In this document: positions 1,370-38,413 of the stretch, in pieces
How the letters are laid out: each line of letters opens with the position of its first letter
Numbering within the stretch: the first letter of the stretch is position 1
Assembly: GCF_002571385.2 (NCBI RefSeq)
Contig: NW_019217954.1
Coordinates: 308,510-372,509 of the forward strand
Direction of reading: 5' to 3'
DNA: 64,000 nucleotides
From: Stylophora pistillata
Lineage: Eukaryota
Program-made: the position numbers and the translations under genes
The notes under the pieces: model-generated
The model's input: the letters and a program-made list of their open reading frames with translations, nothing else
What the model was told of the DNA's origin: nothing
Database searches by the model: none

Positions 1370-2046
1370 TACCTTGTCCGTTTTTTCACGAACCTTACCT
1401 ACCTTGTCCTTGCGGGGGCCCATAACCAAAGAATAAATTATCATAATTTTAGCACAAAACGCTAGAAAAGACTGCTAATAGCAACGTAAGTTGAGGTACA
1501 CACTGGTTGGGAGCAAGGTAAAAGTTATTTGAAACGGTCTCGATGACAAACACGTATATCAAACGTAAAAAATAAAAAATCTCTATAGCTTGATAATGAG
1601 ACAGTTTTATAAATAACAAAATGTTGAATCTTACATGTGGGCTAGTAAGCTTTGAGAAAATTAACCGTTGGTTAGAACGATTTAAATATAGGTAAGCTAA
1701 CCCCGTTTTATGTCGGTCATTTCAGAATGCTTTAATATCAGACTGCGAAATGGCTCTTCTAGCTTGTAAACGAAGTACAGCCTATCTTCAGCAGGTGGTG
1801 CAAAATTTGATTAATGAGACTAGTTTGTTTTTTTTTGGTCATTAACTCATTCCAATTACATCTTCCAGGCCTTCATTTTATTTCAAAGCTTGCCGGTAAT
1901 ACTGATTGGCAATAATAGTGATGTTGAGTAGTCTTGCTGCACAATTAAAATGACTGTTATGTGGCGCCAAATGTCTTTTGATTATTTAGGGAGTAGTGAT
2001 TATTTAGAGGGCGGTTATAAGTATTAGTCAATATATATCCCCAGGC

Positions 2047-3147: not shown

Positions 3148-4938
3148 TAAAAGTTAAAGTAACACATGGGCATATATACAAAGAGCGAAAATATGCGAAA
3201 CGGGTATTTGAAAACACGATGTGTAAAAGAATTTTAATGTGCGAATAGAGGGGTTAAAAAAATGACGAACAGCAAATGCAAGGGAAGCAAAGAAAAAGAG
3301 ATGCAGAGTGCCTAAACAAGCGTGGTCATATTTAAAGCACCACTTTACAGTTTTGTTGTTTCTAAATCATTAAAAGGCGAAACAGGTTATTTAACAAACT
3401 GATGACCAAAAATACACATGTGGTTATTGGAAAGACTCCAGAATACTCCCATACCATTCAAAACAAAGCCATAGTCCCTAAGGCGATCTTTTACTTTCAT
3501 AATTGTTCCCGTTCATCCAAGAACTTTTGCTATCCAGACGACAAAGGGATAGAAAACAAGCGAAGAAATGAACGTTTGTTACAATAACAAAATATTGTCA
3601 ATACTGCAAAGGTACCTTTGAAGAACCACATTTTCGGCGAAGTTTTTCTGCTTCACCAGTTTTTCGTTTCCTTGAGTATGATGATGCATTTTGAAACGGT
3701 ATAAACTACAATCAACGCACTTTGCGCGGGAAACTGCGCCGTAGGTATATTGTCAGTTGCGCTATAAATGTATGTAAATGCAACGAGTCATACACCGAGG
3801 CGAAATGATCTACCAGCAATTCCAATCATAACAAAAACAAAATAATTTGGATATATCAACAAAGTTGAAATGTTAAACTGGCCACCGTAATGATTACAAA
3901 GCTGAAACAAGACCACAATTCTACTCTGGTTTCTTACGATTTTTTTCTATCCGTCTTCTTTGTTTTCACTGAACTCAAATGGTGTATCTACGGACTCGCG
4001 CAAAGAGTAAATCCCTTTCGACAACAACAAACATGCAAATCATTGTAATGGTATTCCCGCGAAAAAGCAAAGGAGAAGGTTAAAATCAGGTTTTTAACTA
4101 TATCTCGCTGGCACTTTTTGATTTAAGATTAATTTTTCACCAAACTATAGATTAATTGTTTGAGCTGGAGAATGAGCGACAAAACTTTTTATTCCGCAAA
4201 ATTTGGCATCTGAACGTCTTCAGCAACCTTTTTAAAGAGGAAGTGAACGCTGAAATTTGTATTTTTTGCATTTATTTCTAGTTAACTTTAGAGGAGTGAG
4301 ATAAACTCTCTTTGGTTAATTTCCGTTCACTTCTTGTTTTTCACGAGAAAATTTGATTTGAAGTTGCCTTTTTTTCCGCTCTTGCGGCTAAGACCGTAGT
4401 CTCAAAACGATTAGCAGCGGTCGAATATAACGTTAGTGGTGGGGACCTAACTTGAGAAGGCCTCATGTGAAAGTTCAAACCTAAACGCTTTTCGCACTTC
4501 ACTTTGCAAATATGAATTTGAAAGTATTCAGTCGTGGAGTGAATCGGTGCACCCGCCACCCTCTCCGTACAGCCGCACAGATTAACCAAGCGCTGGATAC
4601 CGCCGGAGCCCAGTTCAGTAAAAATTAGTCATCACACATACACCTCTCCAAATAAAGAAAGACATTGAAAACCGGCTTACCTACATCAGAAATCATGGTT
4701 GTTCGTTACCATGAGTTTATCACCCATAAATAATTACTGCGTCCCACTCGCTCTTATCGTGTGCTGTCTTAAGTGTTTGATATANGTCTGCTTTGGCTCA
4801 GAAATTCCCATTCCACCCTCCATTCAGGTAACACCAGTAAGAGCCTCCATGAATTTTTGGTTAACATCGTTAGGCCCGCAAAAAGAACCAAGGGAGCGCA
4901 CAAAACAACTCTCGGTACAGGAACAGTGTGTTTACTAA

Positions 4939-5442
4939 GAGGGTCTCAATGGGGGGGGGAGGGGGGGGAAAGAGAAGCCCTTTTGACAGTTAAATCTAAG
5001 GTTATTTGACGGTTGATGGCTAAGTTTTTGGAATGTCATTTCTAAATGAACTAAACGCGCGAGTTGTCTGCAATTTTTCGTAATGACGCGTTTGTAAAGA
5101 ACTGTTAATTTATAACACCTTTTATTCATTAATAACTAAGGTTTTACGACACCGGAAGTCAGTTCTGTCGCTAACCGGGACTAATCGCGCCTTAAGAGTT
5201 AAAGGACTTATATAAATGTATTTTTGTGATATATCAAAACTTTTATCTATAAACAACAGAACTTGACCCCAATTAAGGCGATCGTTTAGTTCTTAATTAA
5301 GGATATCGGAGACATTTGACGGCTAACACTGGCTTGTTTATTTGACGATTGACGGTTGACGGTAAAAATATTGCGTTTTTGACAGTCGACGATTGATGTT
5401 TTGGCCATTTGACGGTTGACGATTAACCCCATTGAGACCCTC
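4939..5442. mobile_element. MITE with GAGGGTCTCAATGGGG terminal inverted repeats and a 6-bp TSD (tactaa)
   Basis: TIRs at 4939 and 5427-5442. tactaa at 4933-4938 and 5443-5448. Internal tgacggt repeats. Confidence 0.85.
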
Positions 5443-5700
5443 TACTAATGTCCATTTGGAAAAGTAGTTTTGATTTCACTCTTTTTTGATATATAGAGAT
5501 GTGAATATTCAAAAACTTTTACTCAATATGAAGACTTGATTGTTACAAAGCAAGCAATAGAGCGCTGTTTCCATGTTATTGAAGAATGCTGGGAAAGGCT
5601 CGCGCCATCCTGTTTGAGTTAGTCGGCTGGAGTTCCCAATGAGGCCGATGCTCACCATTTTTCTTGAATTTTTACCTACTTTACAGAAACAAATACAAAC

Positions 5701-6390
5701 ATGGGACGTGTTACAGTCATTTTTCTCGTGGTGTGTCTAATTGCCGCTGTCCTGGACGAAAGGTGAGTAGCTTGCCATATGAATACATGTGGTGACATCA
5801 TCACGCAGAGGATATGGGACAAGGGCAAATTATTGACCACCAAATTTCTCAAAAAGGTCTAAAATGAACATAGAGTTAGAAAATGGGAGTTAGACATCCT
5901 TTAAAATACCGGTCCCCGGTCAATTCCATCTCACTAACTCTCGCTGGTAAAAGAAAACAGCAACAAAAAAAAAAGACAATCTGAACAATTAAAAGGAACA
6001 CATGATTTCGCTTCACCCCTTAACATTTTCTGACAGAGCCTGTTTCTGAAAGACCTGAGGGACAAACCTAAAAATGCGAAAATTAGTTACAAACATAAGA
6101 TTCTCCTGACAATGACAATGAAATAATTCCGTATACAGACTGACAAAAAAGGAAGTTAACGGATGGGCACGGCTCTCGATCCCTTCTTTGTTTTCAGTGA
6201 CGCTTGGCGTCGTCGACGAAGGAGACCACCTCTTCATAATCGTTTAATCGCCCAAGAGCGTGACCAGACATATGGCGAGGAGATGAAAAAGGAGAAAGGA
6301 ATAAGCCCAGAGGAAAACATGGATATTGAGCCGGGAACTGAGTTCCAAGATCAGGAAAATGAAAATTATTACCTTGATCATGAAATCTGA
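5701..6390 (+). CDS. Small secreted Arg-rich precursor peptide, 84 aa (exons 5701-5762 and 6198-6390)
   Basis: ATG in aaacATGG context. A hydrophobic signal exon ends AG|gtgag, and a polypyrimidine tttcag| acceptor joins it in frame. Product: MGRVTVIFLVVCLIAAVLDESDA-WRRRRRRPPLHNRLIAQERDQTYGEEMKKEKGISPEENMDIEPGTEFQDQENENYYLDHEI*. An upstream acceptor at about 5686 suggests a 5'UTR intron. Confidence 0.8.
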
Positions 6391-6937
6391 TTTGCTCGAG
6401 GACGTTTGCTCTTGACGTTTCCAGTTTTTGTAGATCCTCAAAGGCATAACTTCAGACATATATTTAAATCTCATCCATGTCTTGGAAAAAATTTTCATGG
6501 AATATACTCAACACTCATTACTCGTGTGAACTGTGTTCGTTTGTGTTTTTATATGAAGTAAAAAAAAAAACTTGGCTCAAGGAAGTGTTACCCTTTCGTA
6601 TTTGTCTTCACTTCATGATAAGCACACAAAAACACCGTCTCGAATTCAATCAAGGACGAAGTTATAAACACCTTTCAATTTACCACCTCGACTTTAAAGG
6701 ATGAAGGCTAATTGGTCCTAATTGTGAGAAGAAAACGCAACAAGGAATATCCCCTATGCCTACAATCACAATCTGTCCTCACCAGCTCTTGATGGTGAAA
6801 TAATTATTTACACTTGTTGTATTTCTCTGACTAAGTTTATTGCTGAAGTGTTTTTAACCATAAAGGTCCGTGGAAAAAGTCACAATCAACAAAATATAGA
6901 AATAATAGACAGCCAAAATATCAATTCGGCATCGAAT

Positions 6938-7178
6938 GACTCTTGGAAACTTCCTACTCCTACTCCGTTTCCAGCTTGGCTTCGCCAAGCCACAAGCAGA
7001 TTACTACTTAGTTCAAAATCGTCCTTCTGACCAAGTCCCAAAGAGTGACCTAGTAACTAGCAATGAAAGAGAGAATAAGAGAGAAATGGAGTAAAAGGAT
7101 AACGTGGATATTGAGCTGGGAATCTATATCAACGATTATGATGAGATAAACTCATTGGAAGAAGAAAGCTTATTTTGA
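6938..7178 (+). pseudogene. Decayed tandem paralog of exon 2 of the secreted peptide gene
   Basis: aggataacgtggatattgagctgggaa (7096-7122) matches 6311-6337 at 24 of 27 bases. Also ttcaaaatcgt vs ttcataatcgt and gactcttgg (DSW) vs gacgcttgg (DAW). Contains a frameshift and a TAA. Confidence 0.65.
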
Positions 7179-8660
7179 TTCAACAGGGTGGGTTTTAACC
7201 CAGTTTGGTTTCTACAGAGTCTCGGGCTTTGCTGAAGAAACACTTTAGTCGCACGCTCACTTTTTTGGGTGAATTGAAATTAACACTTCTTTGAACGGAA
7301 ATTTAGTTTATTCGTGTTTATGAGTGAAAGTGCAGCTAACAGTGAGATCAAACACATTTGAAGTATGTGGCAAACCAGGAAAAAAATGAACATCGTGGGT
7401 AACTATTAAAGCTAGAGTTCCCTACCTACCTAAAAAATTCTACATCTAATTCTAGATCTCTTCTCAAGAGTGGTCTAAGGCGCAAAACCAAGGGACCTGT
7501 TCTTAAATGAAGACCGGAGTCTCTAACGGAACTGTGGTTCTGAGTCAGCGTGGGTGTAACAAAATAATTTGATTTAACCCTAAGCAATTAGCCACCGTAA
7601 AGAGCTTCGAAAGCAGACGATTCGGACGTTGGTCCTTCGTAAGAGCGAACCTGCTCTTGGTCCGCTGTGTTTTTACCGAGAGATATAGGTTTTTCTGGCG
7701 CAGTATTTATTCAGTGGTATATAGGTCAGCTTTTGTTCGTACACATTACCAGCATGACTATTTAACAGGTAGGGCAAGGATATACGCCAACTAATGAACT
7801 TCTTTGAGAAGACGGTCTCCACAAATTATGTATGGTGATATTTGGATTGGTCTTGGCAAACTCCATGTCATTGTTATCCCAGGATTTCCAATTACGAACT
7901 TAAATGATTGAGATAACGAAGCTGGCTTGTAGCTAGAGTGAACATTAAAGATATGACATATTATTACCTAATTGATGGGGTGGGTCGGACGACAAAATAA
8001 TCGGCTCGAGGTCACAATATTACGACCGAGAATAGCGATGTACTCAAGTCAAGACCAAGAGCCAAATAATGATGATCCAGCCTGACCAAACTAATTCAAC
8101 TTGTAATTCTTGCTTGACCAAGTCCATACGCACTTTATCATATCACCAACACTATTTATCTTCATTACTTTTTCTTTGTCTTTTGGAAACGGCCTTGCTC
8201 CCGCTTAAGCCCACGGCCCTCATAGGGTTTTCTTTCAAAAAACTGTTTTCAAACAAAAGCGCACGTGGTCATGTGATAACAATGGTTTTTAAATATTAAT
8301 GGTCTCTAAGGTCGTTGAATTACTGCTACATAGTAAACATTAAACACGGCTTTACATACGTCTCACATCATGTTTCAGGAAGTAGCTCTCGTGGTCAGCA
8401 AACCTGAACATGTTCCATACAAGGAATTCAACGACATCACGTGATGTGATACAGTTGAACAAGAAATAGAGGATTAATAATGAGAAAGAGAAAACAACAC
8501 ATGACAATAAAGGATCAAATTCCTTGAAAGGAGGTAGTTGTTTCGATTCGACATCTCAGGGGAGGGAGAGGGGGAGGGGATGAGGAGGGGGAGCAAACTT
8601 CTAATCACAGTTCTTATTCACATTCGAAGTTGCATTTTCTCTTGGTTTCTGAGCCACAGT

Positions 8661-38413
<29,753 letters not shown>

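What the first reader, a model, noticed from the sequence alone, without database searches (positions are those of the whole stretch)
5701..6390. Hidden two-exon gene for a secreted WRRRRRRPP peptide with an acidic C-terminal tail: candidate new antimicrobial or cell-penetrating peptide
Seen: splicing 5762 to 6198 joins a hydrophobic signal sequence ending S-D-A (fits the -3/-1 rule) to a mature N-terminus WRRRRRRPPLHNR, with 7 Arg in 13 residues. The tail has 15 Asp/Glu, a KK dibasic site and ENYY in acidic context. The mature region has no Cys. Known: the layout signal peptide / cationic peptide / anionic C-terminal propiece is that of piscidins, pleurocidins and tunicate clavanins/styelins, and oligo-Arg with Trp is typical of membrane-active peptides. 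Inference: this is a self-neutralised innate-immunity or microbiome-shaping peptide precursor. I do not recognise it as a named family.
Basis: partly seen in the sequence, partly recalled or inferred. Interest (0 to 1): 0.8.

Follow-up and report, generated by a model that had tools for sequence, protein, structure and literature searches.

The report
Unannotated coral secreted oligo-arginine/acidic propeptide gene
A stony-coral genome holds a real, spliced but unannotated gene for a small, probably secreted protein with six arginines in a row and an acidic tail; it is one of three tandem copies found only in this coral and a sister genus, and nothing yet shows that it kills microbes or enters cells.

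Summary
A polyA RNA contig joins 5762 to 6198 across a GT..AG intron.

The gene has at least three exons. The RNA contig carries 76 further bases of a non-coding leader, and its source in this genome cannot be read because the 6 kb upstream of the window is N.

It is one of three tandem copies on the contig: one intact paralog and one with a premature stop. A sister coral genus keeps three copies in the same gene neighbourhood. All intact copies share these features:
- a conserved hydrophobic first coding exon and an invariant SDAW
- an Arg run of 4-8
- an N-terminal segment of net charge +6 to +9
- a conserved dibasic site
- a Cys-free acidic tail of net charge -6 to -11

Exon 2 evolves at about the intron rate (dN/dS 0.6-1.5). 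Pfam, the ESM Atlas and a profile search of 1.84 billion proteins found no other relatives. AlphaFold predicts disorder.

Function is untested. The features resemble those of lineage-restricted cnidarian defence peptides. However, an L-Arg run is also a strong furin-type convertase site, so a stable WRRRRRR N-terminus is doubtful. It belongs to no named antimicrobial peptide (AMP) family.

The parts
5687..5762 (+). Internal exon: 14 nt of 5'UTR, ATG at 5701 (A at -3, G at +4), then 62 nt coding for the hydrophobic leader (M-G-R, 15 hydrophobic residues, D-E-S...). The exon ends in phase 2.
   Evidence: The X1 RNA contig lies on 5685-5760 with no mismatch and carries 76 foreign bases 5' of it. 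Acceptor ttacag|AAAC and donor AG|GTGAGTAGCT are conserved in both paralogs and all sister-genus loci.
5763..6197 (+). GT..AG intron of 435 nt. It is 577 nt in paralog 1 because of a repeat insertion and 327-328 nt in the sister genus. It is retained in the X2 contig.
   Evidence: Joint 5760/6196 'skips 435, GT..AG (cut +2)' in X1. X2 contig 5733-6428 and X3 contig 5807-6533 run through it.
6198..6390 (+). Coding part of the last exon: (S)DAW, six Arg, PP, then the conserved core and acidic tail. Stop codon at 6388-6390.
   Evidence: Homologs are aligned.
6205..6255 (+). Cationic N-terminal segment W-R6-PP-LHNR-LIAQ, net charge +7. The Arg codons at 6208-6225 are CGT CGT CGA CGA AGG AGA.
   Evidence: This segment is +6 to +9 in all six intact gene copies examined, although its sequence turns over.
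6286..6291 (+). Dibasic KK. The same alignment position holds KR in paralog 1 and RKR/KKKR in the sister genus. It is a candidate second convertase site.
   Evidence: Alignments.
6256..6387 (+). Acidic C-terminal part, net charge -11, with invariant blocks (..ESDQ.., NMDI..GTE.QDQENE) and Tyr-Tyr in an acidic setting.
6391..6672 (+). 3'UTR, at least as far as the end of the RNA contig, where Illumina adapter follows. The true polyA site was not determined.
   Evidence: record 2 and the loose end at 6672.

Best explanation
SHOWN. This is a real, transcribed and spliced protein-coding gene of a stony coral that public protein sets lack. It has at least three exons: a non-coding leader that cannot be read here, 5687-5762, and 6198 to about 6672. 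It is one of three tandem copies. The family is found only in this coral and a sister genus, and it evolves fast. The product starts with a signal-peptide-like hydrophobic leader. Next comes a Trp plus oligo-Arg cationic segment, then a dibasic site and a Cys-free acidic tail predicted to be disordered.

INFERRED. The leader is cleaved near SDA|W and the protein enters the secretory pathway. There its basic strings (R4-R8 and KK/KR/RKR) are recognised by furin-type convertases, so it behaves as a processed propeptide rather than one stable chain. I lean to a microbe- or surface-facing defence role. In that reading the cationic segment is the effector and the acidic part masks it until cleavage, as proposed for lineage-restricted bipartite cnidarian AMPs. 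My odds: real secreted-type propeptide family about 0.85; defence peptide about 0.35. The confidence figure given for this explanation refers to the whole statement, including the defence lean.
For: - Spliced polyA RNA contig.
- 14 RNA-type runs from 9 studies hold 0.41-0.54 of the query's words. The exonic share of the query is 0.49, and probable DNA runs hold about 0.9.
- Three exon-1 copies and three or four exon-2 copies in the genome, all in one cluster.
- The same exon structure, donor and acceptor occur in the paralogs and in sister-genus contigs.
- Synteny with the RD-rich neighbour gene, whose exon is 88% identical in protein against 60% for this peptide.
- Three tandem copies also in the sister genus.
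- All indels in exon 2 are in frame, and more than 20 population variants keep the frame open.
- Bipartite charge is conserved: +6 to +9, then -6 to -11.
- dN/dS is 0.6-1.5 in exon 2 against 0.2-0.45 in exon 1.
- Four nonsynonymous and no synonymous differences separate two sister-genus variants (P0003-type L010 and P0002-type L013). Site 6259 has three alleles coding R, S or G.
- No homologs elsewhere.
- Bipartite charge, tandem clusters and genus restriction are the stated hallmarks of Hydra AMP families (PMC10945409).
Against: - No activity, localisation or induction data exist.
- SignalP could not be run. Six Arg directly after the hydrophobic segment is unusual for a cleaved signal peptide and could favour a membrane-anchor topology instead.
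- Polyarginines are nanomolar-to-micromolar ligands of furin and other convertases, which cut at strings of basic residues in the secretory pathway (PMC4482483). W-R6 may therefore be destroyed, not released.
- Exon-2 nucleotide identity equals that of the intron and 3'UTR, so weak constraint explains the high dN/dS as well as diversifying selection does.
- Outside SDAW and the Arg run, the longest invariant blocks lie in the core and the acidic tail, not in the cationic segment.
- One of three copies is already a pseudogene.
- In run X2 the transcript is seen only unspliced.
Confidence: 0.4

Rival explanations
1. Prohormone-like precursor whose products are the acidic or neutral peptides. The Arg run and the KK/KR/RKR site are only convertase cleavage sites, trimmed away by carboxypeptidases. 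The released conserved pieces (..N-R-[LP]-I-A-Q-E-S-D-Q.. and ..N-M-D-I-x-x-G-T-E-x-Q-D-Q-E-N-E..) act as signalling, granule-sorting or calcium/surface-binding peptides.
For: There are two basic strings at conserved positions, and the invariant blocks lie between and after them. Convertases cut at strings of basic residues, and polyarginine binds them tightly. Tyr sits in an acidic setting near the C-terminus in most copies.
Against: dN/dS near 1 and genus-level restriction are unusual for signalling peptides with a receptor. There is no conserved Gly-basic amidation signal and no repeated peptide copies. The conserved Trp and the conserved net positive charge of the N-segment would have no purpose.
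Confidence: 0.25
2. Small membrane-anchored protein. The hydrophobic segment is not cleaved and acts as a signal anchor. The Arg run then serves as the cytosolic positive-inside flank, and the acidic tail lies in the cytosol.
For: Six to eight Arg lie within 7 residues of the hydrophobic segment, so the flank charge difference slightly favours a C-terminus-in orientation (sequence).
Against: The hydrophobic core is only 15 residues, which is signal-peptide length and short for a membrane span. An invariant small-residue motif S-D-A precedes Trp, as at a signal-peptidase site. Four acidic or polar residues separate the core from the Arg run.
Confidence: 0.1
3. A young gene family with little or no function: transcribed and spliced but evolving almost neutrally and on its way to loss.
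For: Exon-2 identity equals intron and UTR identity. dN/dS is 0.6-1.5. One copy has a premature stop and has lost the Trp. A partial copy lacking exon 1 lies on another contig. The intron is retained in X2.
Against: Three copies are retained in syntenic order in two genera. Only in-frame indels occur, and frames stay open in more than 20 variants. There are 23 invariant columns, including two long blocks, and the charge pattern is conserved. Splice signals are conserved.
Confidence: 0.15
4. Endogenous convertase ligand or regulator. The Trp plus oligo-Arg string binds the acidic cleft of furin-type convertases in the secretory pathway. This would be analogous to the small acidic disordered granule proteins proSAAS and 7B2, which inhibit PC1/3 and PC2.
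For: Hexa- and nona-arginine and Trp-polyarginine peptides inhibit furin with Ki of 0.001-1 uM. The protein is small, acidic, disordered and of secretory type.
Against: L-Arg strings are also cleaved. The comparison with proSAAS/7B2 comes from my own knowledge and no homology was found. The run length varies from R4 to R8, which would change affinity by orders of magnitude.
Confidence: 0.07

Closest known systems
Hydra arminins (and Hydra lineage-restricted AMP families in general)
   Same: Small secreted precursors with a sharply bipartite charge distribution. They are encoded by tandem paralog clusters, confined to one genus or lineage, and evolve fast (PMC10945409). From my own knowledge, the active arminin fragment is also Cys-free and rich in Arg, Lys and Trp.
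   Different: There is no sequence similarity. From my own knowledge, arminin has the anionic part first and the cationic part at the C-terminus, the reverse of the order here. Arminin activity has been shown by experiment; nothing has been tested for this family.
Piscidin / pleurocidin precursors of fish (Pfam Antimicrobial_12)
   Same: The order of parts: about 22 aa of signal peptide, a cationic peptide, then a C-terminal prodomain (PMC4995043).
   Different: There is no Pfam match. Piscidins are amphipathic helices rich in Phe, Ile and His. This segment is an Arg run followed by Pro-Pro or Gly, and AlphaFold predicts no helix there. Piscidin prodomains are highly variable, whereas here the acidic tail holds invariant blocks.
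Known coral AMPs: damicornin, AmAMP1, digitiferin
   Same: Short secreted coral proteins, under 100 aa, with N-terminal signal peptides.
   Different: All three are Cys-rich with ShK-type domains (PMC12496222). This family has no Cys and no ShK hit.
Synthetic activatable cell-penetrating peptides (polyarginine - cleavable linker - polyglutamate; from my own knowledge)
   Same: A polycation and a polyanion in one chain, with protease sites between them, so that uptake or membrane activity is masked until cleavage.
   Different: Those are designed molecules. Here neither masking, cleavage nor uptake has been shown.
Prohormone / granin-like secretory proteins (proSAAS, 7B2; from my own knowledge)
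   Same: Small, acidic, disordered proteins of the secretory pathway with polybasic strings that engage convertases.
   Different: There is no homology. This family is much shorter, lineage-restricted and fast evolving.

Membership tests
Piscidin/pleurocidin (Pfam Antimicrobial_12) | Sequence match to the family profile | tested here: not met
   hmmscan against Pfam-A at E up to 10 gave only a sub-threshold Toxin_32 hit (13 bits against a cutoff of 25) for the window peptide. It gave nothing for three relatives.
Piscidin/pleurocidin (Pfam Antimicrobial_12) | Layout: signal peptide, cationic peptide, C-terminal prodomain | tested here: met
   A hydrophobic leader, then a +7 segment, then a -11 tail.
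Piscidin/pleurocidin (Pfam Antimicrobial_12) | Amphipathic alpha-helical mature peptide | tested here: inconclusive
   AlphaFold shows no helix in residues 1-24, but at low confidence (pLDDT 51-58). The Arg run followed by Pro-Pro argues against a helix.
Coral ShK-type AMPs (damicornin, AmAMP1, digitiferin) | Cys-rich ShK-like domain | tested here: not met
   No Cys in any of six copies and no ShK Pfam hit.
Hydra-type lineage-restricted bipartite AMP families (a kind, not a homology family) | Signal peptide plus a strongly biased distribution of positive and negative residues | tested here: met
   The criterion is taken from PMC10945409.
Hydra-type lineage-restricted bipartite AMP families (a kind, not a homology family) | Tandem paralog cluster and taxonomic restriction | tested here: met
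   Three tandem copies here and three in the sister genus. Only 3 hits among 1.84 billion representatives, all coral-metagenome ORFs of the same family.
Hydra-type lineage-restricted bipartite AMP families (a kind, not a homology family) | Demonstrated antimicrobial activity of the cationic fragment | not testable with these tools
   This needs a synthetic peptide and MIC assays.
Proline/arginine-rich AMPs (PR-39, bactenecins, apidaecins) | Extended repeated Pro-Arg motifs over the mature peptide | tested here: not met
   The window copy has a single Pro-Pro. Sister-genus copies have Gly or Ala instead.
Cnidarian neuropeptide precursors | Repeated peptide copies and/or a Gly-basic amidation signal, flanked by processing sites | tested here: not met
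   No internal repeats and no conserved Gly followed by basic residues. Only the two basic strings are conserved.
Cleaved-signal secreted protein | N-terminal signal peptide with a signal-peptidase site | tested here: inconclusive
   By inspection: an n-region (M-G-R), a 15-residue h-region with mean hydropathy 3.3, and small residues at -3/-1 in the invariant S-D-A. No predictor was available, and the joined protein was not sent to any tool.

The most novel reading that the evidence does not exclude
A natural self-masked oligo-arginine peptide. Corals would secrete a Trp-Arg(4-8) membrane-active or cell-entering segment held inactive by its own acidic tail and released by proteolysis at the conserved dibasic site. 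This would be a Cys-free coral defence-peptide class unrelated to the three known ShK-type coral AMPs, and a biological counterpart of synthetic activatable cell-penetrating peptides.
Probability: 0.15. Interest if true: 0.7.

Novelty: new variant of a known kind. Interest (0 to 1): 0.4.

Why it matters
According to a 2025 paper (PMC12496222), only three coral antimicrobial peptides are known, and all are Cys-rich ShK-type.

A Cys-free, charge-bipartite, fast-evolving tandem family would widen the known set of coral secreted effectors, whether it acts in defence or signalling.

The gene also shows that small multi-exon genes are missed by coral annotations. In public data it exists only as prokaryote-style ORF calls that start inside its intron.

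If the oligo-Arg segment does survive secretion, it would be a rare natural oligo-arginine peptide with a built-in anionic mask. If it does not, the family is an ordinary lineage-restricted propeptide.

Tried and rejected
- Pfam scan of the exon-2 peptides: nothing above cutoff.
- ESM Atlas: no usable hit.
- Word-based search of 5.8 billion proteins: only 3 unnamed coral-metagenome ORFs.
- HMMER profile search of 1.84 billion representatives: the same family only. The idea that exon 2 is a remnant of a longer known protein is therefore rejected.
- Rfam on 4800-7400: no RNA family.
- AlphaFold on the exon-2 alignment: mean pLDDT 56, pTM 0.12, no fold. No fold search was made.
- The antisense ORF 6244-6498 is rejected as chance, because the GT..AG orientation and the RNA joint fix the + strand.
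- Search for the leader exon. It is absent from the window at up to 3 mismatches. A deleted remnant lies at 1489-1530. Related leader copies lie upstream of the two paralogs. The 6 kb just upstream of the window reads N, and I did not try to fill it.
- Earlier scan notes: nothing on this place.
- Each exon was used by reference only.
- SignalP was not available.

Full report
**1. What is in the sequence**

Window 5701-5760 reads M-G-R followed by 15 hydrophobic residues and D-E. The hydrophobic core has a mean hydropathy of 3.3. The next bases are AG|GTGAGT. At 6191-6197 there is ttttcag, and from 6199 the frame reads D-A-W, six Arg, P-P-L-H-N-R and so on to a stop at 6388-6390. Joining 5762 to 6198 makes the split codon AGT (Ser).

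- 7 Arg in the first 13 residues after the Trp
- 15 Asp/Glu and 11 Arg/Lys, net charge -4
- no Cys
- KK at 6286-6291
- ENYY near the C-terminus

The six Arg codons are CGT CGT CGA CGA AGG AGA. This run is therefore not a pure triplet repeat.

**2. Is it a gene?**

Yes. Twenty public runs hold part of the stretch. Fourteen runs, six recorded as RNA and eight guessed to be RNA, from nine studies hold 0.41-0.54 of its words. Probable DNA runs hold 0.87-0.90. The exonic share of the query is 499 of 1020 bases, or 0.49.

I laid four runs on 4800-8500.
- **X1 (polyA RNA):** a 641-nt contig at depth 31 covers 5685-5760 and 6196-6672. The 435-base GT..AG skip has a cut that can be read 2 bases to the right, which is exactly 5762/6198.
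- **Leader in X1:** the same contig has 76 more bases 5' of 5685. These end in ...GGGTTTTTA followed by the AG shared with the acceptor at 5685-5686. The transcript therefore starts in an upstream exon spliced to 5687.
- **3' end in X1:** the contig ends at 6672, followed directly by Illumina adapter.
- **X15 (probable DNA):** it covers the intron and shows no such joint.
- **X2 (polyA RNA):** the only contig laid here runs unspliced from 5733 to 6428 at mean depth 83.7, while neighbouring intergenic depth is 3 or less. Intron-retaining RNA is therefore abundant in at least one sample. Contigs cannot show whether the spliced form is also present there.
- **X3:** depth is 2-5 everywhere, so it is uninformative.

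In an intron-retaining RNA the frame from the ATG at 5701 stops after one more codon.

**3. The leader exon**

The 30 junction-proximal bases of the leader are absent from the window at up to 3 mismatches. In the whole genome they match with 2-3 mismatches in three places. Two are on the same contig, 51-53 kb upstream, and one is on another contig. Each match is followed by a GTGAGG donor.

Further leader-like copies lie 5.5-7.9 kb upstream of paralog 1 and about 10 kb upstream of paralog 2. The window keeps only a remnant at 1489-1530, in which the exon part is deleted. The 6 kb immediately upstream of the window reads N. This gene's own leader probably lies there. I did not try to recover those letters. 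The readable leader copies contain no ATG in the last 70 or so bases, so 5701 stays the likely start codon. Its context has A at -3 and G at +4.

**4. The family in this genome**

Exon 2 has four relatives in the 398-Mb genome, and exon 1 has exactly three copies.
- **Paralog 1**, 45 kb upstream on the same contig, is intact. It reads W-L-P, four Arg, G-W-G..., with the same donor, acceptor and tail.
- **Paralog 2**, 21 kb upstream, has lost the Trp, has three Arg, and carries a premature TAG in the tail. It is probably a pseudogene.
- **A copy on another contig** is identical to paralog 1 in exon 2, but its upstream part is replaced by a repeat and it has no exon 1. It is either an assembly duplicate or a truncated copy.

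**5. Relatives elsewhere**

The word search found three proteins. The length-unrestricted HMMER profile search of 1.84 billion representatives also found three. All are unnamed ORFs from ENA coral metagenome assemblies, mostly Tara Pacific. Each was called prokaryote-style from an in-frame ATG inside the intron.

Their contigs carry the same exon 1 (M-G-R-V-T-A-I-F-L-[VA]-V-C-L-I-A-A-F-L-H-E), the same AG|GTGAGTAGCT donor, and a 327-328-nt intron. Downstream lies the same neighbour gene. Its RD/RE-rich exon is 88% identical in protein to window 9993-10310, while this peptide is only about 60% identical. These contigs are therefore orthologous loci of a related coral genus.

That genus also has three tandem copies, with Arg runs of 7, 4 and 5-8. 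A PIP49/FAM69-type kinase-like gene lies between the second and third copy.

Among 24 variants:
- The Arg run varies from 5 to 8. It is a (CGT)5(CGA)2 tract there.
- S-D-A-W is nearly invariant.
- N..I-A-Q-E-S-D-Q and N-M-.-I-..-G-T-E-.-Q-D-Q-E-N-E are invariant.
- A basic cluster (KK, KR, RKR or KKKR) always sits at the same place.

In all six intact gene copies the segment from Trp to I-A-Q carries +6 to +9, the rest carries -6 to -11, and there is no Cys.

**6. Rate of evolution**

- Exon 2 has dN/dS of 0.59 against paralog 1, 0.85-0.89 against the orthologs, and 1.5 between paralog 1 and an ortholog.
- Exon 1 has dN/dS of 0.2-0.45.
- Two sister-genus variants (P0003-type L010 and P0002-type L013) differ by 4 nonsynonymous and no synonymous changes.
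- Site 6259 has three alleles in the laid runs, coding Arg in this assembly, Ser in the RNA runs and the rest of the family, and Gly in X15.
- Exon-2 nucleotide identity (84-87%) equals that of the intron (84-91%) and the 3'UTR (81-89%).

So there is either weak constraint, or purifying selection on the invariant blocks combined with diversifying change elsewhere. The data are too few to separate these. Maintenance of the gene is supported by in-frame-only indels, open frames in all population variants, and retention of three copies in two genera.

**7. What the protein is like**

There is no Pfam family and no Atlas neighbour. AlphaFold on the exon-2 alignment gives mean pLDDT 56 and pTM 0.12, with a single 4-residue helix. 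The protein is predicted to be disordered. Each exon was used by reference.

**8. How it most likely works**

The steps shown are transcription, splicing, family structure and charge layout.

The first inferred step is signal-peptide cleavage near S-D-A|W, which is plausible by inspection. An alternative site after I-A-A cannot be excluded. The Arg run just behind the hydrophobic core is unusual and leaves a membrane-anchor reading open.

The second inferred step is processing at the basic strings. Furin-type convertases cut at strings of basic residues in the constitutive secretory pathway. Polyarginines, especially with Trp, bind them with Ki of 0.001-1 uM (PMC4482483). A run of 4-8 L-Arg would therefore be recognised. 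That makes a stable W-R6 N-terminus doubtful unless the tail or the cellular compartment protects it.

Hydra AMP families are described as having bipartite charge, tandem paralog clusters, genus-level restriction and fast evolution (PMC10945409). This family shares all four. On that basis I lean to a defence or microbe-facing role (about 0.35).

A prohormone-like reading, in which the conserved acidic pieces are the products, follows at about 0.25. A membrane-anchor reading (0.1), a near-neutral young gene (0.15) and a convertase regulator (0.07) remain open.

**9. Comparison with known families**

- It is not a piscidin or pleurocidin. Only the order of parts is shared.
- It is not one of the three known coral AMPs, which are Cys-rich ShK-type.
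- It is not a Pro/Arg-rich AMP, and it is not a typical cnidarian neuropeptide precursor.
- It resembles Hydra arminins in kind. From my own knowledge the charge order is reversed, and there is no homology.

**10. Verdict**

The gene and its layout are real, and the family is new and unannotated. The antimicrobial or cell-penetrating function is an untested lead, and the convertase issue weighs against the proposed mature form.

I rate interest as moderate, at 0.4. This is a new variant of a known kind, namely lineage-restricted, charge-bipartite secreted propeptides.

Noticed in passing
window 4938-5443: A MITE-like element of about 506 bp with perfect 17-nt terminal inverted repeats (AGAGGGTCTCAATGGGG / CCCCATTGAGACCCTCT), about 250 bp upstream of the coding exon. 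In the probable DNA run its word depth is 12,000-17,000 against about 80 nearby, so it is highly repeated. DNA contigs that skip 4955-5422 or 4969-5408 suggest the insertion is polymorphic.
   Followed up: partly
window 7287 to beyond 11000, minus strand: A neighbouring expressed gene on the minus strand. An X2 contig of 4239 nt starts at 7287 preceded by a T run, which marks a polyA end. Its RD/RE-rich exon at 9993-10310 is 88% identical in protein to the sister genus. There is no Pfam hit for that exon.
   Followed up: partly
window 5733-6428 in run X2: In one polyA RNA run the transcript is seen only with the intron retained, at mean depth 83.7. In another run it is spliced. Whether this is regulated intron retention, nuclear pre-mRNA or an assembly choice is unexplained.
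   Followed up: no
window 6259: A tri-allelic nonsynonymous site: C (Arg) in this assembly, A (Ser, the family consensus) in three RNA runs, and G (Gly) in the probable DNA run.
   Followed up: no
window 1489-1530; G000:C171:260527-262966 and 282520-283344; G000:C41:984615-984729: The non-coding leader exon belongs to a small local repeat family, with several copies upstream of each paralog and one on another contig. The window has only a remnant with the exon part deleted. G000:C171:302463-308509, just upstream of the window, reads N and was left unfilled.
   Followed up: partly
L021:1159-2406 and L023:12136-13413 (sister-genus contigs): A single-exon PIP49/FAM69-type (secretory-pathway kinase-like) gene sits between the second and third copy of the peptide family in the sister genus. 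Whether this genome has it in the masked stretch is unknown.
   Followed up: no
window 6163-6197 and the same place in paralog 1 and the orthologs: An in-frame ATG in the last 35 nt of the intron is conserved. It is why metagenome ORF callers report 75-82-aa proteins beginning M-G-T-A-L.. or M-S-T-V-D.. that lack the real first coding exon.
   Followed up: no
L003 (G000:C178:231497-234694): A copy identical to paralog 1 across exon 2, part of the intron and the 3' flank, but with a tandem repeat (units containing GCTATCCA.CGGATAA) in place of the upstream part and no exon 1. It is either a haplotig or assembly duplicate, or a truncated duplication.
   Followed up: partly
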